A DNA stretch of 63,693 nt, the filler included, from Octopus bimaculoides (Eukaryota), in NCBI RefSeq assembly GCF_001194135.2. It is 5 parts of 5 records of this genome, joined end to end, with 100 filler letters (N's around TTAATTAATTAA, not from the genome) between each part and the next. Parts side by side here need not be neighbours in the genome. Positions count along the whole stretch, not along the records: positions 1 to 26,556 come from NC_068982.1; 4 more parts are not named here. One strand, given 5' to 3'. The position numbers and the translations under genes are program-made. Under the pieces are notes generated by a model that did no database searches, was not told the DNA's origin, and saw only the letters and a list, made by a program, of their open reading frames with translations. Positions 2,625 to 26,415 of the stretch are shown here, one piece after another (position 1 is the first letter of the stretch; each line of letters starts with the position of its first letter).

Positions 2625-2830
2625 ATCTTGGCTCGAGGCCAACAATTGTAGGAGAGGGTTAAGTCAATTACAATGACCCCAGTGTTCAACTGGTATTTAT
2701 CTTGTTGACCCTAGAAGGATGACAAGCAAAATCAACCTTGGCAAGATTTGAACTCAGCCCATAAAAATGGATGAAATGCTGTTAAACATTTTGCCTAGCA
2801 TGCTCACAGGTTGACCAACTTGCCACCTTA
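2625..2830 (-). mobile_element. Old CpG-depleted SINE of the 'aaggatgaaaggcaaagtcgacc' family
   Basis: Homologous to copies at 15985, 22525, 22773, 23590 and 30320. Confidence 0.75.
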
Positions 2831-3266: not shown

Positions 3267-5335
3267 TGTTATGGGGTAAAAAGCATAATTCACCTACCTT
3301 GCGGGTCCTCTCATATATCCAACCAGGATATATCCATAGGAGCCCTACCCACCTCAATCTCCAGCCAGTAAATCACCTCAATTCATGTGATCACTGTATC
3401 CATCTCAAGCAGCAGCCTCCAAAGCCTAAGAGGCTCACACAAGTCATCCTTCTGCTCATAAGGCCTTCCACACTCCTCTCCTTCCAGCAAAGCCCCTTGG
3501 TCATTCACATGATGTCACTGACCTTATGCTTCTAACTCACCTCAGCCCTACATGCCCTCCTGATCTCAAAACTCCCCACATCACTTCACTCCATATCAAA
3601 ATCTGCCATCCACCTGGGTGGACATCTCACCCGCTGTTGACCTCTGCAGAGATGTAGTGCTGCACACATCTTCTCTTCTTCCTCCTCCTTCATCACCTGA
3701 TGAATCAACAGTTCTGCAAACATCCAAGACATGATGCAGCATTCCATTCACAGGCATGTTATTTGAAGAATTAATTGCAGTTACTATTCCTTTTCCCCAT
3801 TGCATACAAATGTATAGCATACATTTGGGGGCTTGACCCAGACTTTATCCCCTACCTCTACTGAGGCAGGCTCTCTGTCTTTCACAGATCGCTGTGATAC
3901 CATACATGGATATTGCCATTCATATCTGAATACCACTCTGTGTGGCACTGACTAGGGTAACATATCAAACCAGAATACTGCCTCTATTGCTGAGATATGT
4001 CCCCCTCTCCACCATGACCTTGATTGTGCAGTAGTGTCTCTCCACAATCCCATTTCCACACAGCCTATATGCCACTCTAAAGAAGCAGTTCATGTTCTAT
4101 TTCTTAAGCATTTCTATCAGCTCTTCCAAGCAAAATGCTGTGCTGTTGTCCATCAGCAACTTGTCTACAGGTCTCTGTGAATGGAATGCTGCATCATGTC
4201 TTGGATGTTTGCAGAACTGTTGATTCATCAGGTGATGAAGGAGGAGGAAGAAGAGAAGATGTGTGCAGCACTACATCTCTGCAGAGGTCAACAGCGGGTG
4301 AGATGTCCACCCAGGTGGATGGCAGATTTTGATATGGAGTGAAGTGATGTGGGGAGTTTTGAGATCAGGAGGGCATGTAGGGCTGAGGTGAGTTAGAAGC
4401 ATAAGGTCAGTGACATCATGTGAATGACCAAGGGGCTTTGCTGGAAGGAGAGGAGTGTGGAAGGCCTTATGAGCAGAAGGATGACTTGTGTGAGCCTCTT
4501 AGGCTTTGGAGGCTGCTGCTTGAGATGGATACAGTGATCTCATTCACAATTCAAGAAACTTCATCTGCAATACTTGTCTTGATTTCCTTCTCTATTGCCA
4601 CCACCCCAGTCTGCAGTTGACCATCAAGAGACATGTCCCCTACCAGTAGTGAGTTACATCTACTGCCAGTCATTTCCAGTTGTATTCCGCTGAGATGTTT
4701 CCCACCTAGTGCAGCAGAGGTCAATGGATTGACACCTGTCATAACTTCAGACCGTATTCTAAATGCTGTGTGTCTTGTTCTCTCCCATATGTTATATGGT
4801 ATGCAGTCTTCTTAGCTGACATACTGCAGCTATCTCCAGCTCCGAATCCTCTGGCACTGCCAACCAGGCTTTCTTCATCCTAGTTAGGATGTCCACCTTA
4901 TTCCTTTACAAGGGCACAAAGACTGTGTTCAATTTTAGATTGAATGTGGCAGCTAGCTCTCCCAGAATCCCTAGATGGTACTTTATTAACATCTTTGCTG
5001 CCTCTTTCGTTTGTACCCTCCTCTCATCAGTGATCACTGATCCCACCCATCCAAGCACAATGGCTGACTCAGTTTGCATCTTGATTGTACGCAGCCCCAA
5101 TCTCTGGACCAGATTCACTCCCTTCAACAGTGTGTCCAATTCAACCACATTGATGTGATTGCAATCATCCATTTGCTTGAACCAGGCTGTATCCCACACC
5201 TCAATTCCCCCTATTTCCAGAACAACTTTTGTTGCTATGCTGCTACCATCACACCATCTGGTCTCATTCTCCAATTTGGGTGCATACTAGCTTCCTCTTA
5301 CTAGGTCTTCCACTCTTACAATCTCAAGGTTTGAG
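3267..5335 (-). mobile_element. Decayed Ty3/Gypsy-type LTR retrotransposon: RNase H, integrase, PPT and candidate 3' LTR (3267-3552)
   Basis: Minus strand encodes WCDGSSIATKVVLEIGG...HINVVELDTLLKGVNL (RNase H), NWK*LAVDVTHY, PVDKLLMDNSTAF and AYRLCGNGIVERH (integrase core), and QWGKGIVTAINSSNNMPVNGMLHHVLDV (C-terminus). A purine tract then precedes a 286-nt TGT...ACA segment. Many stops and frameshifts. Confidence 0.85.
3389..4539. repeat. Perfect inverted repeat: 365-nt arms (3389-3753 and 4175-4539) with a 421-nt spacer
   Basis: Compared block by block: no mismatch over 365 nt. ORFs 3596..3820(-) and 4135..4332(+) share an identical peptide. Confidence 0.97.
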
Positions 5336-6364
5336 CTAAGAAAATCACTGGTGACACAGATTTCTAATTTTAATACTTACTTTACTTTTAGAGCTTAATA
5401 TTTTTCAAGATATGCACTAATTAATGATGCAAAAAAATAATCTGCTCACATCTTCCAATTTATATAACTCTTCAATATACCCGATCCATGTTTTCAGAGA
5501 CAAGGAATCCACTCATAATTATTTTAATGACTGGAAAGAAGTAATTTCGAAACTTATTTTGAACTTTAGAAATATATCTGTTGTGAAGAGTGAGAAACAC
5601 TGTCATTGTAAACATCCTATTCAATGCCAAATTTTTGTTGACTCTAACATTAAACATATACCAATGGAACATGCCATATGTCATGGACGAAAATCAGCCA
5701 GTTTAAATGAAAACTTTGCACACGTGGTACCCAAGAATAATGCAAAGTTAATAATTTCAGTAGCATCAAGCTGCACAAAAAGTTGACATTACAAAGTTAG
5801 AGGCTAATGCAATTGCTTTGTAGCAGCTGCACCACAATGCTTTTCAAAATGACAGATGGTTAGCCCAGATACTAATGTTTAGTTTTGGATGTTGCACTAT
5901 GACAAGCTCTGAAAACACACTGTGATATATACATTGGTTATTTTGAAGATTGTGTAAGTTTGGGGTGCATTGAAACCAAACAAAGCAGATGTGTTAACAA
6001 TATTCCATGCATCAACTAGAGAAGACAGTACTGGAAGATTCTATGAACTTGGCAAAATCTATGTAGTTTCAATAGTTAACAGGGCATCTCAGAATTTATG
6101 TAACTGGCTCAAGAAGGTGACCAAACAGAGAAGATGAAAGATGCATTTGCCATCTTTGTATATTTAATGTACTACACAAAAGCTGTCTGTGTATCACATT
6201 TTCTAGATCTAAGGTGGCATCTGTTCTACAAGAATCTGGCAGAATGTAGTAAGTTGCCTTCTACAGCTCATTGAAAATGCATGTGTACAGAGTAGGGTTT
6301 AGTGTCGAGCCACTGCCATATGGCAACTTCTGTTTGACTCAGTAAAACTGGCACTCTATCAGTT

Positions 6365-6530: not shown

Positions 6531-7491
6531 GTCACTAAGTCATACCTGTTATTAGAATGACCATGGTGAGATATTATGTCCCACTATGAAGGTTCCACCT
6601 GCTCCACAAAGCATGTAGAGTTGGTTATATGTGAAATCAAATCCCATACACAACTTGGAGATGTCCATGCAGAAGGCAAATTTGGCTTACACACTTCATG
6701 TGGAAGTGACTGTAAAAATGGCATAGACTGTGTCAAAAATGATAGGACAGTAGAGATCTGTAAAAGTATATTCTTAAACAATATAAACTTAATAAACTAT
6801 TGTAGAATTTAAAACTAACAAGGCTGCTTTCTTACATTATAGACCCATAATTTATAACTTCACAAGACTTGCTATGTCTATTATGTAATACAGTTATTAC
6901 AGAAATATAAAGACAATAGCTTTCAATTACCTGTGTTTGTTGCTTTTTCTATAATCCTGATCCTATTTTGAGGCCTTTATTGGATTCTATGATCCAGAAA
7001 GCCTGGGTTAAGCATGCTTACATTTCTAGATTAACTAGAAGCTGACTTAGCTCAAAAAATTTATTACATAATGGCAATATTGAAAGCCCCAAATGGCAGA
7101 TGTCTGTGCATTCATTTTTAGATTCTTTATTCTAAAAATGTACAGATTTGTAAATCACCAAGAAATTTTAGCAAAATTATGACAACATCTAACTATCTAG
7201 CTATTTCTCATTTTATGATAATTTTTCCTAATTTCAACCTCAAATTTCCAACTACAGCCATTTTTCCATCAATGGAAGCATTGTTTTCCTGAAAAGCTTG
7301 ACATAGTTATGCAAAACCTGTTCCCCCACATTGACTTCCATGTTATGGAACTTGAAAGTCAGTGTGGAAATAGGTTTTGCATAACTATGTCAAGCTTTTC
7401 AGGAACACAACACTTCCATAATGCAAGGGGTACCTATATATTTATGAAATTTATAAAGCTATTTTTAATCACTTATTTGTTTTCTTTTCAG

Positions 7492-7584
7492 GCTGATCGT
7501 CCAGTTGTTAATGATCTGTTCAAAGATTTATCTGATGGATGCAATCTACTTTCACTGTTGGAAGTTTTAAGTGGTGAAACCCTA
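7492..7584 (+). CDS. DMD: Dystrophin exon, CH1 (human exon 3 equivalent): ADRPVVNDLFKDLSDGCNLLSLLEVLSGETL
   Basis: tttcttttcAG acceptor and GTAAGT donor. 93 nt, phase 0/0, same length as human DMD exon 3. The DLF.DL.DG..LL.LLE.L.G motif is the CH1 signature. Confidence 0.93.
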
Positions 7585-9743
7585 GTAAGTATATATGTGT
7601 GTGTATTCTTGAATTGTTATTCTAAGTTTCATGTTAACTAATTATTCAAACAAATCATTTCAATAATCTGTAATGTGAAACCCATAGTAATGATCCAAGA
7701 AGCTTCAGCTTCTTAAAAGAATTATTATATTTATAATATAGGTGTATGTGTGTGTATATATAATATATATATATAGTAAATGATTAAGAAGTTTGTTTTG
7801 CAGTCATGATTTTGTGTCTTTTTTCTTAGTATGCTTTTCACCATGGCTTGACATTAATCTAAGGTTTATTAGTGAAATTGTGGAGCTGGAAATCGAAATC
7901 CCAGCAGATGGATTGTACATGTAATTCAAAAAGCCATCAGCCTTTCCAGTTAGTTTGTCAAACTGATTTTTGTCCAAATATTATGTGAAAAGTACAAGCA
8001 TCTATGGAATACTCAGCCACTTGTACTCAATGGAATAAATCATCCAGTTGATAAAGCAACTGGAATAATTTTTGTCAAAACTAGTAGAGAATTCAGTTAC
8101 TTCAGGAGAGTGAAATGTTAAACTCTCCTTTATTTCTCTTCAGAGATGACACTTTGAAATAAATGAATGAAAGAAGTTTTCTCTCACGATAAGTGTCCTA
8201 GCATTTTTCACAATTAGTCTTCTCAAAGTACCATATATCTAACTGTTGCAGTTTGTTGAGATAATTTCAAAGTAGAACTGTTGAAATTAAAACATAGAAC
8301 ATATGAATACTTTTTCTGTTATTCAATTTTTATTTTTAATTTCCAGTTAAAGCTAGAACTAGACCTTAAATTTCCAGTTGAAAAAAAAAAAAAAAAAAAA
8401 ATTGTTATCTACCTTTGTAGATAACAATGCAAGGGGGATAATTATTTTTAAAAAATGCTCAATTATTCTCCCTTATTAGATAGCTGTCGGCTTTTTATAA
8501 AAAGAAAAAAAAGAAAAAGAAACAACTCTACTAATTGCTCAAGAAAAAACTGAAGTTAAATATTTTACTGAAAAGCAAATTTTAATATTTTTCTTAAAAA
8601 CATAGATTTAAACCAATGAAAAGATACTTCCTAATAGCATTCTTTTGATAATACTGGTGAAATACCATTTACATGACTATGTGATAACTCTTGCATACTG
8701 TAAACTAGATAAAAATGAATATGCCCATTCTCAAAATAAACCGTCAGTGTGGAATTTTGTTTTATAACTAAGATATATATCTAGAATATTAGATGTATTA
8801 AACTAGTTAGCTTAGTTAACTCCAATGAAGTTTGATAGAACTGTTTATACTTTTTAACTCAACTGGATTTTTTTTTTTTCATATAGTATTTTCTGCTTAT
8901 AATGGATTATAATGTAAACTTATGTTGTATATTTGTGTATTTTTCTCTCACTTCACAATATATTCCTTTTTTTTTATTGCCATTCAATGGTTATCATAAT
9001 TTCATGGGGCTGGTGGTTAATATGCAGAAGCTGTTTTATTCTGATTGAACACAACTGTTTGCTGATGGTTGGTGCTGGGTTGAGATGTTTTGTTTCTATT
9101 TTTGATGAAGTGTTTACTCTGGTGGATCTTTTTAAAGTTTTAGCTGGCGCAATGAATAGTCCACCACTTGAGATTAATGTATGGAATCATTTCCATAAGT
9201 CAGCAATATTTGTAGCTTATGGGTTAACTGTTATAGCTAACTTCAAGCTTAACTCTTCTTAACTGTTTCTCTTTCAGCCCAATGATCACTCTCTTTCTAC
9301 TCTATTCCCTTCCCATATCTTCATTACCTTCTTCCGTTTCCTTTCTTTCTTCTCCCTCCTTTCCTTTCTTTCTTCTCCCTCCTTTCCTTCTTTCTTTCTT
9401 TCACTTCTCTTCCCTTTCTTTCTGTCTCCTTTCTTTCACACCCCATATCTCACCACTATTCCTCTTTCATTTTTCATTCATTAAATCTATCCTGCTAAAT
9501 GTTTCCCACTGTCTTATCTATTTTTTTCTCTTCTAATCTCTTCTTTTATTCCTGCTCTCTCTCTCTTCTTCCAGCCTACCATTCTCTCTTTCCCATTACT
9601 TCTTACTCTTTTCTGTCCCTCCCTTTACCCCATTCTTCTCTTTCCCATTTCACCCCTCTCCATCAGCTTTCTTCTCTACTCCTGAATGAAGCAGCTTCTG
9701 TGTGATCATTTAACCTGCTAGAAATACCAGTGAAACCTCTTTC

Positions 9744-9790: not shown

Positions 9791-10976
9791 TCATCATCAT
9801 CATCATCGTTTAACGTCCGCTTTCCATGCTACCATGGGTTGGACGATTTGACTGAGGACTGGTGAGCCAGGTGGCTACACCAGGCTCCAATCTGATTTGA
9901 CAGAGTTTCTACAGCTGGATGCCCTTCCTAACGCCAACCACTTGGAGAGTGTAGTGGGTGCTTTTATGTGCCACCGGCACAAGGGCCAGTCAGGCGGGTA
10001 CTAGCAACGGCCACNNNNNNNNNNNNNNNNNNNNNNNNNNNNNNNNNNNNNNNNNNNNNNNNNNNNNNNNNNNNNNNNNNNNNNNNNNNNNNNNNNNNNN
10101 NNNNNNNNNNNNNNNNNNNNNNNNNNNNNNNNNNNNNNNNNNNNNNNNNNNNNNNNNNNNNNNNNNNNNNNNNNNNNNNNNNNNNNNNNNNNNNNNNNNN
10201 NNNNNNNNNNNNNNNNNNNNNNNNNNNNNNNNNNNNNNNNNNNNNNNNNNNNNNNNNNNNNNNNNNNNNNNNNNNNNNNNNNNNNNNNNNNNNNNNNNNN
10301 NNNNNNNNNNNNNNNNNNNNNNNNNNNNNNNNNNNNNNNNNNNNNNNNNNNNNNNNNNNNNNNNNNNNNNNNNNNNNNNNNNNNNNNNNNNNNNNNNNNN
10401 NNNNNNNNNNNNNNNNNNNNNNNNNNNNNNNNNNNNNNNNNNNNNNATGTAGGAAGGTATGCATCCTGGCAGAGGCTTTGGATTTAGGTCTCACTTGGCT
10501 TGCCGGGTCTTCTCACGCACAGCATATTTCCAAAGGTCTTGGTCAGAAGTCATTGCCTCGGTGAGGCCCAATGTTCGAAGGTTGTGCCTCACCACCTCAT
10601 CCCAGGTCTTCCTGGGCCTACCTCTTCCACAGGTTCCCTCAACTGCTAGGGTGTGGCACTTTTTCACACAGCTATCCTCATCCATTCTCGCCACATGGCC
10701 ATACCAGCGCAATCGTCACTCTTGCACACCACAGCTGATGCTTCTTAGGTTCAACTTTTCTCTCAAGGTACTTACACTCTGTCTAGTATGCACACTGACA
10801 TTACACATCCATCGAAGCATACTGGCTTCATTCCTTGTGAGCCTACGCATGTCCTCAGTAGTTACAGCCCATGTTTCACTGCCATGAAGCATGGCTGTTC
10901 GTACACATGCGTCATACAGTCTGCCTTTTACTCTGAGTTAGAGGCCCCTTGTCACCAACAGAGGTAAAAGCTCTCT
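9791..10976 (-). mobile_element. 5'-truncated RTE-clade LINE (ORF C-terminus, 3' UTR and (ATG)n tail), spanning a gap
   Basis: RELLPLLVTRGL*LRVKGRLYDACVRTAMLHGSETWA...RWYGHVARMDEDSCVKKC...GRGRPRKTWDEVV. Ends in a (CAT)n run on the + strand. Confidence 0.9.
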
Positions 10977-11159: not shown

Positions 11160-11870
11160 ACTGCATCTAACACGACCCATCATCTGAAATTTTGACACCT
11201 CCTTCAGGTTTGTTTTCCTACATAACTCATAAAGTAAATTTGGAGGGACTGTGGCTGTTCATTTGTGGGTAACAGGGAACCAATGAGGTGATAGACTTGC
11301 CTTTGAACTTTGATGTCGGCATAAATTCATGTTTAACCATCTTCATAGATGCAGTAAACGATGTCATTTGAAATGCAGAGTTGTATTGTTCAGGAAATCC
11401 TTTGACTGGATGGAACTGCCTTCTAGAAGATCCATAAGAGGTTGAGAAGGAGCTGGTCGTGCTGGCAATGTTACCTGACCACCTGAGCAGCACATACCAT
11501 TTGTTTCATTTGAAAATTTGAAACCTCTGCAGAAACAAATCATTTTTATAAGAATGGGATGGAACATATCTGAAAACAGCTTCAGGAGTTGTGAAGAACG
11601 AATTTGTACATAATCTGTTTCTGAGAGCTATTCTATTGGACCTCTGTCTAATCATTAAAACATTAATTTAATGATCCAGCATTAAGTACTGCAGCATACC
11701 TTTGCTGATCTTGGGAAAGTCTCCTCTTCCTTCTCTCTTGAAACTCTGTCTGACATGCTGCAGCATGTCTTTGCTGATCTTGAGAAAATCTCATCTTGCT
11801 TCTCTCTTCATACTCTGACACACACTGACGCACCATTCTGCTGTGGTGGCCATAAAGATGGAAAGTTGCT
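11160..11870 (-). mobile_element. Helitron Rep/Hel N-terminal remnant
   Basis: ETNGMCCSGGQVTLP, YNSAFQMTSF, FMPT.K.QGQVYHLIGSL and LQIYF motifs, preceded by ~69-nt tandem units encoding ERRKRRLSQDQQRYAA-type repeats. Confidence 0.85.
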
Positions 11871-14094: not shown

Positions 14095-14175
14095 AAAAGA
14101 GAAAGAGGCTGTTTGCGGGTTCATCACATCAATAATGTTAATCGTGCCTTATATATTCTTGAAAAAAATTATAAT
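14095..14175 (+). CDS. DMD: Dystrophin exon, CH1 (exon 4 equivalent): KRERGCLRVHHINNVNRALYILEKNYN
   Basis: poly-T...acAG acceptor and GTAAGT donor. 81 nt, phase 0/0. Matches human PKEKGSTRVHALNNVNKALRVLQNNN (78 nt). Too short for the ORF track. Confidence 0.93.
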
Positions 14176-15383
14176 GTAAGTAATTATATTTAGCTATGCA
14201 TTTTCCAGATGTTGACATAATTAAATATTTCTAACAACTTTAATTCTCCAATTTTACATTATTTCTCTTCTTTAATGTGTGAATTTCCATTTTTTATGAT
14301 CTTACAATGAAAGCCTATTGTTTTATAACTTGTATTGCTAGCATTTAGACATTGTTAATTGATATTAATATGGAACATACACATAGACACATAATCTTGA
14401 TTATATTCATCCTCGACTGTGTTCACATTATCCATCTCTGGCTAGTTGCCTATATGCAGCATATACTGGGATGGAATGGAATGGAATGGAATGGAATGGA
14501 TACTGATACATTTATTTTGGAAAATTGTACCATTCTTTTCTACAATCTAAACTTAAGATAGTTCAGTTGTAATTTTAAGTAAAATGATCTTCCTGCTATT
14601 TGCTATTCTAATGCATTTAGAATCTTGATGTACTGACATTCAACTGTTATTAAGTTTAAAACTATGGGCTGCTCACATGGGGTGTTAATAAATTCTGCCA
14701 GTTTGGTGAGGGACTTTATGAAAGTCAAGTGGGTAAAATGTGAATGGCAAAAAAGTTCTGATAACTGCTATCTCTCTTAAGTAAGGGCTTTCAAAATCAC
14801 TAAGCCATCTGATGAAATAATTGTGTTGCCACATCTTCAATATGCTTTGGACAGCTTAGAATAAGAGGCATATTTAAGTCCACAAGTTTAAAAAATGTGC
14901 TCAAATATTACATAGCAGTGACATGAATGCTTATTTGACCAATTGACTAACTGGACATTTCATGAAAGCCTATGTAGAGTATTTAACCTATATGTTCTTA
15001 AAAGTTCGATCAGCTATATATGTAGCATATGGCTGTTCAAATGCAATAAGAAATTGTTTCTATGTATATGAAAAGCAAGTTATATGAAACATGGCTATAA
15101 GTGAGAACGATTGATTTGGGTTCAAATTTTACCATCTATTGGGTATGTAATAATAATTTATTGAGTGCATATTGAGAAAATAACCTGACATGTATTGGAA
15201 ATGCTAGGAGAAAAATGCTGTGATGGAATCTATGTGTGGTCAAAATTGCCCATGGAATATGAGATTGCTTAGAATTAATATGTATGGAGACATATTTTCA
15301 TTTCCCTTTTACTACTGATATGTGTCTAATATATTCATAACAGTAAGCCATAACTTTGTTTTGTTTTATTTTATTATTTCCAG

Positions 15384-15476
15384 ATAAAACTTGTAAATAT
15401 TAGTAGTAATGATATTGTGGATGGCAACTGTAAATTGATTCTGGGTTTGGTATGGAGCATTATTGTTCATTGGCAG
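15384..15476 (+). CDS. DMD: Dystrophin exon, CH1 end (exon 5 equivalent): [31 protein letters not shown]
   Basis: ttcCAG acceptor and GTAACT donor. 93 nt like human exon 5. LVNI.S.DIVDGN.KL.LGL.W.II.HWQ motif. Confidence 0.95.
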
Positions 15477-15984
15477 GTAACTACTTCTCTACTAATTCTT
15501 AGATGTTTTCTTGAGTTGTAATTGCTTTAGTATCTTTATTTTCTTGCAAAAGAATTTTTTTTAAATTTTAATTTCCTCTCTTAAAGTTTATTTATGTCAG
15601 AAGCTATATATCATTTTAGGTCTGTAAGTTTAAAATTGTATCTAGAGTTGTTTTTATTAGATGTGTTTTATGTTTATGATCATATTTCTTTTTGCAATAA
15701 TTAACTTGTAACATTTTAAATGGTCTGTATTCATTATACAATATTTGTCATTTCTTTCTATTGCTTTACATTTTACATGCAAGTTTATAATTTTTATTCA
15801 GTTAATTACAGATTAAGTAGTTTGTAACTATTACTCATTTTTAAAATTTAATGAAAACAGAATGGCTCCTACAATAGATGAGTTAAATGGATGTTTGAAG
15901 CTTGAGACTACTGACATAAGTTCAAACTAAAATCAATGAAATACCTAAAGGTTAAATATACAGGATCAAATATAACATTGGTTT

Positions 15985-16195
15985 CAAATTTTGGCACAAG
16001 GCCAGCAATTTTGGAGGTTGGGGTAAGTCAATTACATCAACCCAAGTGCTCAATTGGTTCTTATTTTATTGACCTGAAAGGATCAAAGGCAAAGTGGATC
16101 TTGGTGGAATTTGAACTCGGAGCATAAAGATTGACAAAATGTCTTTAAGCATTTTGCCTGGTGTGCTAATGATTCTGCTAGTTCAACACCTTAGA
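15985..16195 (-). mobile_element. Old SINE of the 'ggatgaaaggcaaag' family
   Basis: Same core as 2625, 22525 and 30320, with CpG decayed to TpG/CpA. Confidence 0.75.
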
Positions 16196-17939: not shown

Positions 17940-18031
17940 GTCAAAGATGTAATGAAAGATGCCATGGGAGAACTGCAACAATCAAACTTGGAACAAATGT
18001 TATTAGAATGGTGTAAAGAAATCACTAAAGA
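17940..18031 (+). CDS. DMD: Dystrophin exon, CH1-CH2 linker (5' part of human exon 6): VKDVMKDAMGELQQSNLEQMLLEWCKEITK(D)
   Basis: tttatAG acceptor and GTATGT donor. 92 nt ending in phase 2. Matches the dystrophin-type linker [25 protein letters not shown]. Confidence 0.93.
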
Positions 18032-20864
18032 GTATGTATTTGGCATGTGACCTTAATGTGTTAAAAATGACATAACCTGTCTGTATAGTCTTCATTTCTC
18101 TCTTTAAAGTAAAATAATATTTGGTAACTCTATCTAAAGACGTTATCTGTTGTAATATTTACATAATATTTGTGAATAGCTATGTGTCCGTTTCATTATA
18201 TGAAACATTACTTGTTGAAATTCAGAAAAATATTAAATCTTTTTATACTTCTTTCCTTAAAATTTTTATCATAAAGATTCATATATAAGTTTTGGTAATA
18301 TCAAGGGTAGCATAAAGAATTGATATTTTGTAGCAGAAGATTTTCATTAAGACTGAAAACATTTTATAATTGTTAGTTTCATTCACAAAAGTAAGTGATA
18401 TATATCCATTAAAGGGTGTGAAATAAAGCAGTTTTGGAGATGGATAATTGTACAAATTTAAACATTTACATAACATTATACCTTTTTTAAAGCTAATTAT
18501 TTAACTATACTATTTATCTATTTGGTTACAGTAGTTCTGATGGTTGTTTCGGGTAACTTCCAATTTGCTCTGCTTCTGCAGACCCATGGCACAGATTTTT
18601 TAATTAAAACATGGATTCACTCATCTCCATTCTGTCATTTGAGCTTGAAGCCACTTACTTTTAAAATACAAATATGTATCCTATGTTCACTTTTTAATTA
18701 ATATTATATAACTAATTTAATTGATGTAATTTGTAAATCATAAATGAAGCTACTAATTTGTTATTTAGATGGCATGTATAAATTAAGTGAATATCACTTC
18801 TTAGGCTTGAGGAACTGAAAAGCAAATCCACTTGAAACTTTGTGGTTAGTTAAAGTAAAGAAATATTTAGAGATCAATGATTACATAAACAGATGAATAA
18901 AATTTATTGCTGTTATAACAGCAATTAACATATTCCATGAAGTCCAGTCTTAGTAACAAATTACATCATAATAATAACTGTTAGAAAGAGAGACTTGTTT
19001 TTTAACTCCTCCACATTGAACATTCCTGTTTTACCAACTCTTATTTATTAATGAATAGGCTACTACCAGAGTGTCTTCCTTGTGGATATTAATTAACAAG
19101 AAAATATATATTCACCTGATCACACATCATTTTCACATATCCAAACCAACTTTTATTTTACAATGTTTGAGAGAACTATTCAGGGTAACACCATAGAAAA
19201 ATATTTTGCTTTTCTTTGAAATCATAAATTTATGTAATAAATTCTAAAATATTCAGCTTTTTATTATCCTTTCTTTTCTTATTTATATGCATGTTGAGTT
19301 GGCATCTCAACAAATTTTATATTAAGCTCCAAATTCTCTGTAAGCCTTTAAAAAATGAAAATTTAAAAATAAAAAAAAACGAAAACTTAAAATCTTAAAA
19401 ATCAAAAACTTGAAAAAAAAAGCAAAAGCTTAAAAAAAGAAGTCGGTGTTCCACGATTTTCTTTATAAGGTACAGTATTTTGCTATTGTTACATTATAGT
19501 TAAATTACTTGGCTATTACTCTGCTTTTCGAAGCTCTTTAAAACTACATGATTCTATACAATAGAAACTATTTTGTTCAGCCATTTAGTATATTTACTTA
19601 TTTTGTATTAATGTATATTCAACAAGTGATGGAGTTAATTAATGCATTCTTAATGATTAAATTATTAAGTATTACTGTTATGATATAGTTATTTTTTAAA
19701 TATGAATATTGTATGTGGAATTTATTCTAATAATACTTAGTGAAGCAAAATGGTTATGTTAAAGGTTGATGGTTCTTCACCTTTTGTAATTTAGTACCTT
19801 CTTTTGCAAGATAGCATCTTACAAATGACCTCTCAGCCTGTTTTTAAAAAAGAAAGAAAAATCAAACTGAAGCTAATTTTGTTGTAGTTTATTATGAATA
19901 TTTGCTTTCCTTATGCAGCATGTGCCTCTTTGTAGATATGTATGGATTAATGCCTCTCATGTTAATTTTTTTTTCAATCATGAAATTTATTAAATAAGGC
20001 AAGGATTTATGTAATGAAATTATATTGGACCTTGATGTATCTTCTATCAAGTTTCTGTTTACTGATGATATACTGTTCTATTAATATTTTAATCCAAACA
20101 GGTTTTTTTGAAAATTTGTTTAAAATATGAAAAATGTATTTACTTTAAATATCATGTTTCTTAGAAAACCCTTCTAAATATTTAGTACATGTCATAGCAC
20201 TCCCTTTGTAAGCTCACAACACCACTAAAGGAGTAAGGGTACATGCTACTGTTTAGGCTAAGAACCACTGCTCTAGACATTAGGTATACTATTTTTATTC
20301 TGAATCTTGGAGTAAACCTAGTATCAGTAATCAACAAAAACTTGTCTGTCCTACCAGTGTTAATGTTATTAAAGGTTACATGTTGAAATATAATCAACAT
20401 ATCAGTTTAAACTAATATCTTAAATCCATTTTAAATAACATTTTTGACTTCACAATGCCTAGAATGTGATTCTTTTAAGATTTCAGGTGATATTCAAAAA
20501 GTAAATAAAAGTATGCAGTGTATGTGTTGAAATAATTTTAAGATAGAATATTGTAAAGCTTTTAAATCACCAGAGTAGATTTTTTTCCTTGTTTACTTTC
20601 AAATTAGCCTCATGAGTGTTAAAATGTTATGAAAAAAAAAAAAAAAATTAAAAAAAAAATTAGATGTACAGTTTCTTTTCGCTTGGAATAACTAGTGTAT
20701 TGATTGGAGTTATTCTCTTGGACTATATGTCTTCAACAGCATCATTAGAGACATTTACAAATTACTATAAAATTGTCATTAAAATTTATTTGATTAATCA
20801 GCACAATTATGTTTGTTAACTATTTTGTTTCAATCTCAGCTAATGAAATAGAATATCAAGCATG

Positions 20865-21045: not shown

Positions 21046-21522
21046 TCTGTATTTTTATTTACATATGCAATTGTTTGTATGAATGTGTGGTGATCAGGTT
21101 CTCCTGTCAATAAATCATCCAGGCACTTTGTTCCTCTTAAGCCATGTGAAATAAGTGACCCTTTACTTGGAATACAGGTAAGGATTAGCATCAAAGAGAC
21201 ATCTGGGTTGTAAAACAATGTGTCAAATAGCATATTCATCAAACACATGCAAGCATGGAAAAATGGATGCAAAATGAATGAACTGCATATAGTTTTATTC
21301 TTGAAAAATAAATGGTTATTAAAAGAAAAATACCCTTTGATTGAACACTCAATAATTACAGATTGATGTCAAAGAAACTAATTGAATATATGAATAGTGA
21401 AATAAATGCAATGTTTAATTGAAAGTGTGAGTAATAAGTGACGAGTAAATCAAGGATATTATTTTTTCAGGTGACATTAGTTGTTAACTAATAATCTAAT
21501 ATATATTAATTTTGTTTTTCAG

Positions 21523-21603
21523 CTATGATAAAGTTGAATTAAAAAACTTTACAACAAGCTGGAAGGATGGTTTAGCATTTAATGCATTAATACATAAACA
21601 CCG
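21523..21603 (+). CDS. DMD: Dystrophin exon, CH2 (3' part of human exon 6): (D)[26 protein letters not shown](R)
   Basis: tttgtttttcAG acceptor and GTAAGT donor. 81 nt, phase 2/2. NFTTSW.DGLA.NALIH motif. 92+81=173 nt, the length of human exon 6. Confidence 0.95.
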
Positions 21604-22524
21604 GTAAGTCAAACTTCTTTTAATTTAGTTAATGACTAAATGTTTGTTACAAGGTTCCACTCCAGCAATTATCTATAGCAATTAGAATAAAATCAATATT
21701 GATTAGGTTTCATATTTCTAGCTTTTTGTTTCAAATTGAAATGCAGACCAAAATGACTGAAATCATTTAAAGAAACACACACACACACACGCACGCGCAA
21801 TTTACAGTTATCTACATTATCTAACTTTCTTATTCCTCAAATTTTATTTTTATGTAAAATATACCATAGCAATAAATGACAGCAACCTGTTCAGGAAGTG
21901 AATCTTTGAGAACATTCAAAACTAGCTGACTGTTTAACCAACAAGAAAGAATGCATCAGTGGGATGAAACACAATATGAGATTGTGTTGAACTGTGGAAA
22001 ACCCAAGTGCAGATTTAATGGAAATATATTTATTTTAAAAATAGAGATTAGAGGTTTTCTGTTTTTCTCAGAAGTGTTCCTTTCAAGTGGTTAGTTGAGA
22101 GAATCTAAAATGGGCAGGATGCTTATTCTTTTGTATTTGTTCTGTTGTTTATTTCTCACCCCAGTGTGCAAATCTTGAGGCTCCTGCTCATTGCTTGGTT
22201 GCCTCTGTGAGCCTATAAGGAATGTGTATCTAGTTGCAAAGGTATGCTTAGTGTCAGGAGAGCTTTACAGTATGAACAAAGCCACCAGTGTGTGGTTGAG
22301 TTCATGAGGTGTAGGTATCAATGGATTAAAGAGATTTATTGGTTCTGTGAGTAGTCTAGTGTAGGTTGAGTATAACTAGGCTTAGTTCGTTTCTATTGAT
22401 GTCTGGGAGAAACAACATCCAGTTGTGTTGATGAGGTTTTAAGCTGAGTGAATCGCTTGCATGTTGCTTTCTAAAAAATAGAAAGAAAAAAAGCTTCTGA
22501 CTAATAATAATAATAATAATAATA

Positions 22525-22738
22525 ATCCTTTCTGCTGGAAGCACAAGGCCTGAAATTTTGCAGGAGAGGACTAGTCAATTACATTGACCTCAGCGTTTAA
22601 CAGGTATTTAATTTGTTGACTCTGAAAGGATGAAAGGCGAAGTTGATCTCAGCAGAATTTGAACTCAAAATGTAAAGACAGATGAAATGCTGCTAAGCAT
22701 TTTGCCTGGCATGTTAATGATTCTGCCAGCTCATCACT

Positions 22739-22774
<36 letters not shown>

Positions 22775-22952
22775 ATCCTTTCCACTATAGGCACAAGGCC
22801 TGAAATTTGGGTTGATGGGGCTAGTTGATTACATCAACCCCAAAAGGATGAAAGGCAAAGTTGAGCTCAGGGGAATTTGAACTTAGAACATAAAAACATG
22901 TAATGCCGCTAAATATTTTGTCCAGCATGCTAACAGTTCTACCAGCTCACTG
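22525..22952 (-). mobile_element. Two tandem old SINE copies separated by a (TAG)n run
   Basis: Two repeats of ...aggcctgaaatt...aaggatgaaaggc...gaatttgaact...gctaa...ctgccagctca. Confidence 0.8.
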
Positions 22953-23589: not shown

Positions 23590-24025
23590 TTATTTCTACT
23601 CTAGTCAAAAGACCTTGAAAATTTTTAGAGAAGAGGGATAGTTGATTACATCAACCCCAGTGCAGAACTGGTACTTATTTCATCGACCCCCAAAAGGATG
23701 AAAGGCAAAGTCGACCTTCATGGAATTTGAAGTCAGGATGTAGCGGCAGATGAAATACCGCTAAGCATTTTGCCCAGTGTGCTAACAATTCTTATTTCTT
23801 TATTGCCAACAAGGGGCTAAACATAGAGGGGGCAAACAAGGACAGACAAAGGGATTAAGTCGATCACATCGACCCCAGTGCGTAACTGGTACTTAATTTA
23901 TCGACCCCAAAAGGATGAAAGGCAAAGTCGACCTCGGCGGAATTTGAACTCAGAACGTAGTGGCAGACGAAATACGGCTAAGCATTTCGCCCGGCGTGCT
24001 AACAATTCTGCCAGCTCGCTGCCTT
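23590..24025 (-). mobile_element. Dimeric SINE (older unit plus CpG-intact unit)
   Basis: Two tandem units sharing ...catcgacccc.aaaggatgaaaggcaaagtcgacct...gctaacaattct. Confidence 0.8.
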
Positions 24026-24470: not shown

Positions 24471-25309
24471 GAGCTGAATAGTGACATAGATAATGCAAGA
24501 AAAGAAATAATGAAGATAATAATAATGTTAATCCAATCATACTGTTTGAAAATTAGTAAAGTTTCTTTTACAAAAATATTCGATATCCTCATCATTCATT
24601 TAATCCAAAGTTGTTTTATTCTCCCTATTACTATTAACTGAACTACTACATTGTCCACTCACCCTTATATGAGAATATTTAGTCAGAATCAACTCCAAAT
24701 TTCAACATTTATTTAAAGGTAAATTTATCTTTTTATGTTTCAACATTATCAGTTGGCCATAAATTCTTCCAAGGGTTAACCCTTTTTATACAATATTTCT
24801 GTTGAAATACACTATTGTTCATTGTCACTGTTGTCCTCTTCCTCTTTGTTTGCCATACGTTTTCCTTGCTGGCATAAGCTGGTGTTTGGAACATAAAATA
24901 ACATGAAATTCTGATGGAAGATTTTAATTAAAATCACTTTAAAACAGGGAGTTAGTATTGTAGAACCAGGGGCTGTCTTGTTCATTTTGGTATCAAAAAG
25001 ATTAATTATCTCAAATTATTTCAGTCCTTTCTATCTTTCTCTTTTGACATCTTCCTTTCTCAGTCTGTCAGTCATCTCAATCAAGTAGTATAGAGACAGG
25101 CTGTTGAGTTAGTAATATTTGATGGTGTATGGTTGGTTGTTAGACATGTCTTGTAAAACATAGAACTGAAAATATATTACATATTCACTATGTAATGAAT
25201 GTAACTCTCTCTTTTTCTTTTGTTGAAATTGATAAAATAAAGATAAATTAAATTGTAAATATGTATTATAACAGCATTGTATGTTTATATTTTAAATCTA
25301 TATTCTTAG

Positions 25310-25425
25310 ATCTGAGTTATTTTCATATGATGATCTTTTGGATAAAGACAATTACTATAATCTGTCACATGCTTTCAATGTTGCACACCAACATTTGAAT
25401 ATTGATCCATTATTGGATCCTGAAG
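25310..25425 (+). CDS. DMD: Dystrophin exon, CH2 (exon 7 equivalent): (R)SELFSYDDLLDKDNYYNLSHAFNVAHQHLNIDPLLDPE(D)
   Basis: ttcttAG acceptor and GTTGGT donor. 116 nt (human 119), phase 2/1. L.HAF..A...L.I..LLDPED motif. Confidence 0.94.
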
Positions 25426-26095
25426 GTTGGTGAATTTATTTAATTTTAAAAAAAATATTTTAAATTGATAATTATTCATAATAATTATTATGTTTTGGTA
25501 TTTTTAAAAGCAGAAAGTAATAGAAATTAAAAATAATTGTTATTTCTATTTGAAATGGAAAACTTTATTTTGCATATATATTTATATATTTCTTTCTCAT
25601 GTTAGTCTGAATTGAGGAATTTTAAAGTAGGTTACTTAACATTCAGATAGCTACTAGTGTCCCCCACCTCCTAGTTTGCTTTAATCTACATTCATGTTCA
25701 AGGTTGTCAGTTGTCCTTGAAACAAAATTAGGAAATTGATTCCTTTATATTTAGAACCTGTCATAGGGTTCTAATTTTGTTTTACTTTACAGTTGTAATT
25801 ATTCCTCAAATTAATTAAATCTGTCATTCACACTGATTCTGACCTGATTCAATACGTCTTATGTTTTGAAATGAGAATTATTGAAAAAAATCTTATATTT
25901 CCATTATTAATTAATGAGTATACATTATTTTCCTATGCTAAAAGAGATTAGTTAAGTTAGATTACTGTTGCCCCACTATATTGGTAATTTCTTCTGCAAA
26001 AGTTAACAACTTAAATGTTTCGGTTTACCTTCTCCATAGAAGCTAAATATGTGATGTGTGATTATTGTGTTAATATTACTATATTTTCATTACAG

Positions 26096-26415
26096 ATGTT
26101 AATGTAGACAATCCTGACAAGAAATGCATTATAATGTATATAATGTGTTTATTTCAAGTCCTGCAAAATTCAAGCAATAATTCATCAAATGAAACAAATA
26201 CAAAATTAGATTCAGTTAAAAACTTACAAGCTGAAACAACTTTAATATCATCTTCTCCAAAGAGTATTGATGAGCACAGTGTACCTACACAACCTGCAGC
26301 AACTGTTACTACTGAATCCAGTTCTTCACTTACTGTTGAAGATGATATGAATAAAATAAGTGCAAAGTGTATGGACAAGACTAACTATGAAGCTTTGAAT
26401 CCTGCTGCTGCTGAG
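26096..26415 (+). CDS. DMD: Dystrophin exon, CH2 end plus hinge 1 (exon 8 equivalent): (D)VNVDNPDKKCIIMYIMCLFQVLQNSSNNSS...NPAAAE
   Basis: ttacAG acceptor. PDKK.I.MY...LFQVL motif. Frame stays open to a GAG|GTAGGA donor in phase 0, as in human exon 8. The 3' boundary is less certain than the 5'. Confidence 0.85.

What the first reader, a model, noticed from the sequence alone, without database searches (positions are those of the whole stretch)
3389..4539. Perfect 365-bp inverted duplication inside a dead Gypsy integrase in a dystrophin intron
Seen: the arms 3389-3753 and 4175-4539 are 365/365 identical, although the host element is full of stops and CpG-depleted, so the copy is far younger than the insertion. 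The right arm sits inside the integrase between ...IVNEI and (G)PVDKLLMDN, where a few codons (~FLER) are missing. It carries an inverted copy of the integrase tail, PPT and LTR start, which lie 421 nt away. The outer junction falls on a palindromic GATC shared by both readings. Inference: a short-range replication template switch. In the dystrophin pre-mRNA it would fold into a 365-bp perfect dsRNA stem. That is a strong ADAR or Dicer substrate in a lineage (coleoids, if the species inference holds) known for very extensive A-to-I editing, and could silence the parent TE family or affect splicing about 3 kb upstream of a CH1 exon.
Basis: partly seen in the sequence, partly recalled or inferred. 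Interest (0 to 1): 0.7.

Follow-up and report, generated by a model that had tools for sequence, protein, structure and literature searches.

The report
Young inverted duplication in dead retroelement
A 365-base piece from the tail of a decayed retrovirus-like element, sitting in an intron of a dystrophin-type gene of a probable octopus, was copied backwards into the same element 421 bases away; this is a known kind of DNA copying error, it creates a long hairpin-forming repeat, and its effect on the gene is untested.

Summary
Positions 3389-3753 and 4175-4539 are a perfect 365-nt inverted repeat, or 368/369 over 3385-4543. It is the only long inverted repeat in the piece.

The left arm is native sequence of a minus-strand LTR retroelement remnant: the integrase C-terminus, the pol stop, a purine tract and the first 84 nt of a putative LTR. 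The right arm is a reverse-complement copy placed inside the integrase core. Twelve intact homologues show that exactly four residues (consensus FLER) are missing there.

The outer junction has 4 nt of microhomology (GATC; 7 of 8 if extended). The inner junction has none. The copy carries a frameshift and CpG-type substitutions of the source, so it was made from an already decayed template.

Best reading: one templated inverted insertion, either a replication template switch or fold-back repair of a break. It postdates most of the element's decay.

The gene call (dystrophin/utrophin-type CH exons on the plus strand) holds. The "Gypsy" label was not verified.

The RNA hairpin is predicted (-886 kcal/mol), but editing, small RNAs and splicing effects could not be tested. 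No independent reads were reachable, and a 432-N gap marks a draft scaffold, so an assembly artefact or arm collapse remains possible. This is a new example of a known kind; interest is modest.

The parts
3389..3753 (-). Left arm, the native source. On the minus strand it holds the last ~56 codons of integrase (from ...NG|MLHHVLDVCRT to RVRCPPRWMADFDME*), the pol stop, 113 nt of spacer with a purine tract, and the first 84 nt of the putative 3' LTR.
   Evidence: 365/365 reverse complement of 4175-4539. Its inner boundary is continuous with native integrase sequence as judged from 12 homologues. tblastn hits of homologues run through it.
3754..4174 (-). 421-nt spacer, which is the loop of the hairpin. 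It is the native C-terminal half of the integrase core plus the post-core region (RPVDKLLMDN...GNGIVER...EAVFWFDMLP...VGDKVWVKPP).
   Evidence: Translation and alignment. It contains stops at 4099-4097 and 3954-3952 and two frame changes.
4175..4539 (+). Right arm, the inverted copy of 3389-3753. It is inserted in the integrase core between codons ...IVNEI and RPVDK and replaces 12 nt (consensus FLER). 361 nt are unambiguously copied and 4 nt (GATC) are shared with the target.
   Evidence: Homologues hit this arm on the plus strand only through the copied tail (P0001 residues 677-700 and 726-745 at 4171-4336). After removing 361 nt the two integrase halves are in one frame.
3385..3392 (.). Outer-junction microhomology, source side: ATGTGATC.
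   Evidence: 7 of 8 identical to the target-side ATGAGATC, with the last 4 (GATC) perfect. The chance of 4 nt or more at a random junction is 1.6%.
4536..4543 (.). Outer-junction microhomology, target side. On the minus strand it reads ATGAGATC and belongs to the native integrase codons N-E-I.
3586..5352 (-). Pol remnant of an LTR retroelement: end of DUF7047, RNase H, integrase zinc finger, integrase core and C-terminal tail. It is 5'-truncated, with no RT, gag or 5' LTR detectable upstream of 5352. Premature stops are at 5289, 4908, 4794, 4761, 4749, 4672, ~4645, 4553, 4099 and 3954. Frame changes are near 4720, 4640, 4005, 3840 and 3700.
   Evidence: tblastn with 10 homologues. Homology search E = 2e-96 and downwards. 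Stop list, plus the stop in LAVDVTHYW* seen.
3473..3485 (-). Purine tract GGAAGGAGAGGAG, a putative polypurine tract. It is directly followed by TG (3472-3471), the putative first bases of the 3' LTR.
   Evidence: Read from the sequence. It lies 113 nt after the pol stop. In the intact relative L001 the LTR, defined by its two copies, starts TGTGTTG after a purine run, 115 nt after the pol stop. Inference only, because no second LTR is in the window.
7492..7584 (+). 93-nt exon encoding [31 protein letters not shown], part of calponin-homology domain 1 of a dystrophin/utrophin-type gene. It is the nearest exon, 2952 nt downstream of the right arm.
   Evidence: AG at 7490-7491 and GTAAGT at 7585-7590. 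tblastn. Best named hits are dystrophin/utrophin of molluscs.

Best explanation
The repeat is a single, evolutionarily recent, templated inverted insertion inside an old, dead, 5'-truncated LTR retroelement. The element lies antisense in an intron of a dystrophin-type gene.

A growing DNA 3' end left its template inside the integrase core. It copied 361-365 nt of nearby sequence (integrase tail to LTR start, 421 nt away) from the wrong strand, then rejoined the original path 12 nt from where it had left. One junction used the microhomology ATG(A/T)GATC. The other is blunt.

Two routes give this product and cannot be separated here. The first is a replication template switch (four-point model, FoSTeS/MMBIR type), for example a minus-strand nascent end annealing to the opposite strand at 3385-3392. 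The second is repair of a double-strand break, in which the 3' end at 4174 folds back, copies 3753 to 3389, and is then joined at GATC by microhomology-mediated end joining.

Shown: the geometry, the 4-residue loss, the microhomology, and that the copy was made from an already decayed source. Inferred: the enzymatic route, that the decay happened at this locus, and that the structure exists in the animal.

Consequence: any transcript through the intron can fold into a stem of about 365 bp with a 421-nt loop. That it is edited, diced or affects splicing is a prediction from general knowledge of long intronic inverted repeats. It is not a result of this work. The most likely status is a neutral or slightly deleterious young structural variant.
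For: - Perfect 365-nt arms and a 421-nt spacer; the only such repeat in the piece.
- The left arm is native: its inner boundary matches the homologue consensus. The right arm splits the integrase core, where 12 homologues have FLER and the window has a 4-residue gap.
- Homologues have no insertion at that site, so the repeat is not a family feature. The intact relative L001 has no inverted repeat.
- The two integrase halves are in one frame once the 361 nt are removed.
- Outer-junction microhomology is 4 nt perfect and 7 of 8 extended; the chance of 4 nt or more is 1.6%.
- There is no target-site duplication. There is a 12-nt loss instead, so this was not a transposition.
- The copy carries decay of the source. 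Inside the arm there is a frame change between HVLDVCRT (one frame) and RVRCPPRWMADFDME* (another), and R>H and R>C changes at conserved arginines.
- At least 10 premature stops in about 467 codons correspond to roughly 10-30% divergence from an intact ancestor in simulation. Zero differences in 365 bp bound the divergence since copying to under 0.41% per arm at 95%.
- CpG observed/expected is 0.06-0.09 in the element, the same as the surrounding intron, against 0.64 in an intact relative.
- Published descriptions of the mechanism: template switching creates perfect reverse-complement repeats in one event (PMC8794818, PMC10710096), and fold-back templated inverted insertions occur at breaks (PMC11724301).
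Against: - No read-level or independent evidence for the two novel junctions. Exact look-ups of 8 ORFs from the locus (two span the junctions) and a metagenome scan found nothing.
- The piece comes from a scaffolded draft with a sized 432-N gap. Perfect arm identity may therefore partly be a consensus effect, and the orientation of the spacer cannot be fixed by short reads.
- The inner junction has no microhomology, which is unusual for a primed switch. However, 56% of random junctions have none, and a later substitution at 4174 could hide 1 nt.
- 365 nt is far longer than typical short-range template-switch mutations; the largest pattern in PMC8794818 was 59 bp. It is also longer than fold-back insertions at yeast breaks, mostly 5-34 bp (PMC11724301).
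- The decay could have predated insertion if a dead copy was mobilised in trans.
Confidence: 0.7

Rival explanations
1. Assembly artefact or exaggeration. Either the inverted copy is not in the genome (a mis-filled gap or chimeric molecule), or the arms differ in the genome but were collapsed or polished to one consensus.
For: - A 432-N sized gap 5.5 kb away shows a scaffolded draft assembly.
- Perfect identity is what consensus building or polishing of a repeat produces.
- Nothing from this locus could be found in independent data.
Against: - The structure needs two novel junctions only 12 nt apart on the original sequence, with the path returning in frame to the integrase. Missed-adapter or fold-back long reads instead give spacer-less palindromes that do not return.
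- Ligation chimeras would need a restriction site at both ends, but only the outer junction is a GATC.
- In a k-mer graph assembly, junction k-mers must occur repeatedly in reads (inference; the assembler is unknown).
- No N run or other irregularity lies next to the arms.
- Collapse would change only the dating, not the existence of the repeat.
Confidence: 0.13
2. The inverted copy arose during reverse transcription, or was already in the source copy, and so is as old as the insertion. The arms are identical either because gene conversion between them keeps them so, or because the insertion itself is very young and the stops were inherited from a dead, trans-mobilised master.
For: - Reverse transcriptases switch templates often.
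- The source spans the pol end, purine tract and LTR start, where strand transfers occur.
- Decay shared by both arms says only that the template was already decayed, not where the decay occurred.
- Close inverted repeats can convert each other (general knowledge).
Against: - The element lacks RT, gag and the 5' LTR. An integrase-mediated insertion would have been full length, so a later loss is needed as well.
- CpG depletion in the element equals that of the host intron.
- Zero differences in 365 bp against an estimated 10-30% decay requires very efficient conversion of short arms.
- A master with at least 10 stops and about 5 frameshifts would need helpers.
Confidence: 0.1
3. The repeat is a selected functional hairpin-RNA locus, for example a source of small RNAs against the parent family or an ADAR-dependent regulator of dystrophin splicing, rather than a neutral accident.
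For: - Predicted stem of about 365 bp, minimum free energy -886 kcal/mol for 3350-4580.
- It lies inside a transcribed gene, 2952 nt from an exon.
- A-to-I editing in metazoans, with Octopus bimaculoides among the species studied, mainly targets dsRNA formed by young repeats and nearby inverted copies (PMC9989829).
- Template switching has generated miRNA hairpins (PMC10710096).
Against: - No expression, editing or small-RNA data could be examined.
- Perfect identity is explained by youth and needs no selection.
- The arms come from a heavily decayed copy, so small RNAs would match active relatives poorly. The closest known proteins are only 45-60% identical.
- No Rfam family matches.
- Being a substrate is not the same as having a function.
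Confidence: 0.05
4. A second copy of the same element family inserted in opposite orientation into the first (nested transposition).
For: Nested insertions of retroelements are common (general knowledge).
Against: - The inserted piece is only 365 nt, begins inside pol and ends 84 nt into the putative LTR, so it has no element ends.
- It is identical to the local decayed copy, including its frameshift.
- There is a 12-nt loss and no target-site duplication.
Confidence: 0.01

Closest known systems
Template-switch mutations, four-point model (Löytynoja and co-workers; PMC8794818, PMC10710096)
   Same: A reverse-complement copy of nearby sequence replaces a short stretch of the original. This creates a perfect hairpin-forming repeat in one event. 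Source and target are within about 1 kb, and the path returns to the original template.
   Different: The described events are tens of bases long: stems of 30-55 for the miRNA cases, and the largest pattern seen in rRNA was 59 bp. Here 361-365 nt were copied. The ancestral state here is inferred from protein homologues, not from an orthologous sequence.
FoSTeS/MMBIR-type inverted duplications and leading/lagging strand switching at forks (e.g. ODIRA, PMC10766183, PMC4689423)
   Same: A nascent strand switches to the opposite strand at a short inverted microhomology and produces an inverted duplicate.
   Different: Those events usually span kilobases to megabases and change gene copy number. 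ODIRA needs an origin between two pairs of short inverted repeats and gives triplications. Here there is one small insertion with a blunt second junction.
Fold-back (snap-back) templated inverted insertions at double-strand breaks (PMC11724301; Pol-theta-type end joining, general knowledge)
   Same: A resected 3' end folds back on its own strand, copies it, and is then joined through microhomology. The result is a small deletion plus an inverted templated insertion.
   Different: Reported insertions are mostly 5-34 bp and are primed at microhomology next to the break. Here the fold-back would span a 421-nt loop, copy 365 nt, and show no priming microhomology.
Intronic inverted repeat pairs as ADAR substrates, and hairpin-RNA loci that yield endogenous siRNAs
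   Same: Two nearby inverted copies of repeat-derived sequence in one transcript can form long dsRNA. Young, little-diverged pairs are the main editing targets across metazoans (PMC9989829).
   Different: Those pairs usually come from two independent insertions of a repeat family and are imperfect. Here one local copying event gave perfect arms. No editing or small-RNA evidence exists for this locus.

Membership tests
Template-switch mutation (four-point model) | The new segment is the exact reverse complement of a nearby source segment | tested here: met
   365/365; source 421 nt away
Template-switch mutation (four-point model) | The new segment replaces part of the ancestral sequence and the path returns to the original template | tested here: met
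   A 4-residue (FLER) gap relative to 12 homologues lies exactly at the insertion. The flanking integrase halves are in one frame after removal.
Template-switch mutation (four-point model) | Ancestral state without the copy is seen in an orthologous or parental sequence | not testable with these tools
   No eukaryotic genome or read collection is available. Look-ups were negative.
Template-switch mutation (four-point model) | Short range and short length (tens of bases) as in described cases | tested here: not met
   The range is short, but the length is 365 nt, against up to 59 bp in PMC8794818.
Microhomology-mediated replicative rearrangement (FoSTeS/MMBIR) | Microhomology at breakpoint junctions | tested here: inconclusive
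   Outer junction: 4 nt perfect, 7 of 8 extended, P = 0.016 by chance. Inner junction: 0 nt.
Microhomology-mediated replicative rearrangement (FoSTeS/MMBIR) | Arises during DNA replication or break-induced replication | not testable with these tools
   Sequence alone cannot separate it from fold-back break repair.
LTR retroelement, Ty3/Gypsy superfamily | pol order RT - RNase H - integrase with an rve core | tested here: met
   The window keeps RNase H and integrase in that order. Intact relatives show RVT_1, DUF7047, RVT_3/RNase_H, a zinc-binding domain and rve.
LTR retroelement, Ty3/Gypsy superfamily | Two long terminal repeats | tested here: inconclusive
   No direct repeat of the 3' end is in the window, and the element is 5'-truncated. 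The relative L001 has LTRs 4.17 kb apart.
LTR retroelement, Ty3/Gypsy superfamily | Sequence signatures specific to Gypsy rather than retroviruses or other LTR groups | tested here: inconclusive
   Integrase_H2C2 passes its cut-off in one relative only. No RT_RNaseH or Pao-type domains were hit. The best solved-structure matches are MMTV integrase and foamy/MLV RT, and Ty3 is not among the 60 matches shown. No repeat library was available.
Dystrophin/utrophin gene | Tandem calponin-homology domains with dystrophin-type sequence, encoded by several small exons | tested here: met
   Seven plus-strand exon matches in order. The segment [29 protein letters not shown] matches dystrophin, not spectrin or actinin. 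Best named hits are dystrophin/utrophin. No octopus orthologue was retrieved.
Hairpin-RNA / ADAR hyper-editing substrate | Long, nearly perfect intramolecular dsRNA | tested here: met
   Predicted uninterrupted stem, minimum free energy -886 kcal/mol.
Hairpin-RNA / ADAR hyper-editing substrate | Transcribed, and shows clustered A-to-G changes or arm-derived small RNAs | not testable with these tools
   No RNA data are available.

The most novel reading that the evidence does not exclude
A single template-switch event of more than 300 nt has created a long perfect hairpin-RNA unit inside the pre-mRNA of a dystrophin-type gene in a coleoid cephalopod. The hairpin is processed (hyper-edited or diced) with a measurable effect on dystrophin splicing or on relatives of the element. 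That would make it a snapshot of hairpin-RNA gene birth at a size class not yet documented for this mechanism.
Probability: 0.05. Interest if true: 0.55.

Novelty: new member of a known kind. Interest (0 to 1): 0.25.

Why it matters
If real, this is a clean natural example of a templated inverted insertion. Its size (365 nt) lies between the short template-switch mutations studied in primates and the large inverted duplications of clinical genetics. Source, target, 12-nt loss and junction microhomology are all readable because the target is a protein-coding remnant with many homologues. It also places a long perfect dsRNA-forming unit in an intron of a large gene in an animal group known for heavy RNA editing, so public RNA data could test whether such young hairpins are edited or diced. 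It does not reveal a new kind of system, and no function is shown.

Tried and rejected
- **Independent evidence for the junctions.** I made exact look-ups of eight ORFs of the locus, including the two that span 4174/4175 and 4539/4540. None is in the 15-billion-protein collection. The homology search with the pol remnant returned nothing above 60% identity, so no other assembly of this locus is indexed. A 30-mer next to the inner junction has no exact match in the metagenome contigs. The DNA collections on hand hold no animal genomes.
- **Species and orthologue through the gene.** The exon-derived query returned only short CH-domain proteins at 66% identity or less and no cephalopod dystrophin. 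An orthologous intron could not be fetched.
- **Pfam on the window's own translations.** This gave only a weak RVT_3 hit and nothing for the integrase. The family had to be shown through homologues.
- **Classifying the element.** The upstream ORFs of the intact relative L001 have no Pfam match. 'DUF7047' does not occur in the paper library.
- **Proximity-ligation or restriction-site artefact.** I considered this because the junction is a GATC. I rejected it because the inner end of the copy is not at a GATC and the copy runs through an internal GATC (3562 / 4363).
- **Merged haplotypes of a simple inversion.** Rejected, because that would not produce the spacer-to-inverted-arm junction.
- **Nested insertion of a second copy.** Rejected; see the rival explanations.
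- **Rfam.** No match in the window.
Full report
**1. The observation**

The repeat finder reports one long inverted repeat: arms 3385-3753 and 4175-4543, 369 nt, 421 nt apart. Direct comparison shows a single mismatch four bases from the outer end. In the whole 26.5-kb piece the next longest inverted repeat is 58 nt at 90%.

**2. What the arms are made of**

On the minus strand, 5352 down to 3586 is a decayed pol remnant of an LTR retroelement.
- A composite translation finds 82 homologues. The best E-value is 2e-96. The named hits with the highest identity are from Octopus sinensis, O. bimaculoides and Argonauta hians, at 45-60%.
- tblastn with ten of them places the end of DUF7047, RNase H and the integrase zinc finger at 5352-4720. 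The integrase core lies at 4720-4550 and 4186-3990, and the tail runs down to 3590.
- Nothing matches reverse transcriptase, gag or a 5' LTR upstream of 5352. The element is 5'-truncated.
- It has at least ten premature stops (5289, 4908, 4794, 4761, 4749, 4672, ~4645, 4553, 4099, 3954) and about five frame changes.
- The pol stop is at 3588-3586, after RVRCPPRWMADFDME, which matches the conserved C-terminal R-x-RRPP-x-W-x-x-DY motif of the homologues.

**3. Which arm is the original**

Across 3753/3754 the minus strand reads ...VTAINSSNNMPVNG|MLHHVLDVCRT. The homologue consensus is VTxxNSxNNVSVDGMPRHxLDVR, so the left arm is continuous with its native neighbour.

The right arm splits the integrase core. 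The window reads ...SIADEVS*IVNEI, then the arm, then RPVDKLLMDNSTAF.... All twelve aligned homologues read ...ILNEIFLERGPVDELLMDN... with no insertion. Exactly four residues (FLER) are missing, and the following glycine is an arginine.

Removing the 361 unambiguously copied bases puts both halves of the integrase in one frame.

**4. Content of the source**

The source holds about 168 nt of pol 3' end, the stop, 113 nt that end in the purine run GGAAGGAGAGGAG (3485-3473), and then TG... (3472 downwards).

No second LTR is in the window, so this cannot be proven. An intact relative on an ENA contig (L001) has two LTR copies 4.17 kb apart. They begin TGTGTTG directly after a purine run, 115 nt after its pol stop. 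That geometry matches closely.

**5. Junctions**

- Outer junction. The source reads ATGTGATC (3385-3392) and the native target reads ATGAGATC (minus strand of 4543-4536, codons N-E-I). That is 4 nt of perfect microhomology and 7 of 8 extended. The chance of 4 nt or more at a random junction is 1.6%.
- Inner junction (4174/4175). No microhomology.
- There is no target-site duplication. Instead 12 nt are lost.

**6. Age**

The copy was made from an already decayed source.
- Inside the arm, the frame of HVLDVCRT and the frame of RVRCPPRWMADFDME* differ.
- Conserved arginines read H or C, the typical CpG decay pattern.
- CpG observed/expected is 0.06-0.09 in the arms, spacer, rest of the element and flanking intron. 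It is 0.64 in the pol gene of the intact relative.

I mutated that intact relative in silico. Nine to ten in-frame stops in 467 codons correspond to roughly 20% divergence (range about 10-30%). Zero differences between 365-nt arms bound the divergence since copying to below 0.41% per arm at 95%. So the copy postdates most of the decay.

Two cautions apply. The decay could in principle have occurred in a master copy before insertion. The perfect identity could also be overstated by the assembly (section 8).

**7. Mechanism**

The product is what the four-point template-switch model describes. Replication leaves the template, copies a nearby stretch from the complementary or nascent strand, and returns, giving a perfect reverse-complement repeat in one step (PMC8794818; PMC10710096). 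Two routes fit.

(a) The minus-strand nascent end ...AATGAGATC-3' anneals at 3385-3392 on the opposite strand about 1.15 kb ahead. It copies up to 3753 and returns 12 nt beyond the point of departure. This is a leading-to-lagging template switch of the kind discussed for inverted copy-number variants (PMC10766183).

(b) After a break, the plus-strand 3' end at 4174 folds back and copies 3753 to 3389. It is then joined at GATC by microhomology-mediated end joining, like the fold-back inverted insertions at yeast breaks, which are however mostly 5-34 bp (PMC11724301).

Each route leaves one junction without microhomology. I cannot choose between them. The size, 365 nt, is unusual for both short-range classes and small for FoSTeS/MMBIR events.

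**8. Is it real?**

I could not reach reads or any other assembly.
- Eight exact ORF look-ups, two of them spanning the junctions, were negative.
- The pol search found no near-identical protein.
- A junction-flank 30-mer has no metagenome match.

The piece contains a sized gap of 432 N at 10015-10446, which marks a scaffolded draft. This cuts both ways.
- In such assemblies near-identical repeats can be collapsed, so the arms may not be strictly identical in the genome. The spacer orientation between perfect arms also cannot be fixed by short reads.
- Junction sequences in a k-mer graph assembly must come from repeated reads (inference; the assembler is unknown).

The structure also does not look like known artefacts.
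- It needs two junctions 12 nt apart on the original sequence and returns in frame.
- Fold-back long-read chimeras do not return.
- Ligation chimeras would have a restriction site at both ends, but only one end is a GATC.

I put about 0.13 on artefact or serious exaggeration.

**9. Gene context**

On the plus strand there are exon matches at 7492-7584, 14098-14169, 15381-15482, about 17940-18035, 21521-21604, 25308-25424 and 26095-26163. They cover both calponin-homology domains in order.

The segment IVHWQV / [23 protein letters not shown] and the end LFQVL match dystrophin and not spectrin, actinin or plakin. The best named database hits are dystrophin/utrophin of molluscs.

The exon at 7492-7584 has AG and GTAAGT borders and is 93 nt long. 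From my own knowledge, unchecked here, that is the length of human DMD exon 3. No exon lies between position 1 and 7491, so the repeat is intronic. It is 2952 nt upstream of that exon, and the element is antisense to the gene.

**10. Consequence**

Folded as RNA, 3350-4580 gives an uninterrupted stem of the full arms with a structured 421-nt loop, minimum free energy -886 kcal/mol. Across metazoans, including O. bimaculoides, A-to-I editing mainly targets dsRNA formed by young repeats and nearby inverted copies (PMC9989829). The prediction that this hairpin would be hyper-edited if transcribed is therefore reasonable.

It remains a prediction. No RNA data could be examined. Silencing of the parent family is doubtful because the arms derive from a copy far from any active relative. 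An effect on splicing is pure conjecture.

**11. The 'Gypsy' label**

- Intact relatives show RVT_1, DUF7047, RVT_3/RNase_H, a zinc-binding domain (Integrase_H2C2 above its cut-off in one relative) and rve.
- No Gypsy-type RT_RNaseH or Pao-type domains were hit.
- The closest solved structures are retroviral: MMTV integrase at E = 8e-9, and foamy and MLV RT at about 1e-5.
- The relative L001 is compact, 4.17 kb from LTR to LTR.

The element belongs to the Gypsy/retrovirus-like group with the RT-RNase H-integrase gene order, but I could not confirm the superfamily.

**12. Verdict**

The structural interpretation is supported: a local, recent, templated inverted insertion with a 12-nt loss and one microhomology junction. 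The functional interpretation is untested.

This is a new example of a known kind of mutation. It is tidy and unusually large for its class, and it lies in an interesting gene and lineage, but it shows no evidence of function and has no read-level confirmation. Interest 0.25.

Noticed in passing
window 10015-10446: A run of 432 N inside the piece. It is a sized gap, so the source is a scaffolded draft assembly. This bears on how far perfect repeat identity can be trusted.
   Followed up: partly
window 7272-7329 and 7362-7419: A 58-nt inverted repeat, 90% complementary with a 32-nt loop. It ends 71 nt upstream of the acceptor AG (7490-7491) of the 93-nt CH1 exon. It is much closer to the splice site than the 365-nt repeat and looks like a small foldback or MITE-like element.
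   Followed up: no
window 2645-2821, 15955-16184, 22502-22732, 22752-22892, 23623-23792, 23841-24017: Five to six diverged copies (65-88%) of a SINE-like repeat of about 160-230 nt. Several are preceded by trinucleotide runs (TAA, GTA). Two pairs sit head to tail at 22.5-24.0 kb.
   Followed up: no
window 11689-11824: Tandem duplication of a 69-nt unit, 1.9 copies at 86%, in a GC-richer stretch (11-14 kb) that may be another repeat-derived segment.
   Followed up: no
L001 487-830 and 4655-5000 (ENA ERZ25072293 contig): An intact relative of the element is compact, 4.17 kb from LTR to LTR, with LTRs of about 340 nt at 95% identity. Its pol carries DUF7047 between RT and RNase H. The family's nearest solved structures are retroviral, and the group seems poorly described: no paper in the library mentions DUF7047.
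   Followed up: partly
window 7492-7584: The CH1 exon is 93 nt. From my own knowledge, unchecked here, that is the length of human DMD exon 3, which encodes the same part of the domain. This would suggest a conserved exon structure between mollusc and vertebrate dystrophin.
   Followed up: no
window 4174: The first native base after the inverted copy makes the conserved glycine codon read AGA (Arg). If the copy had run one base further it would have given GGA (Gly). So either 1 nt of microhomology was later mutated, or the base was mis-incorporated at the switch.
   Followed up: no
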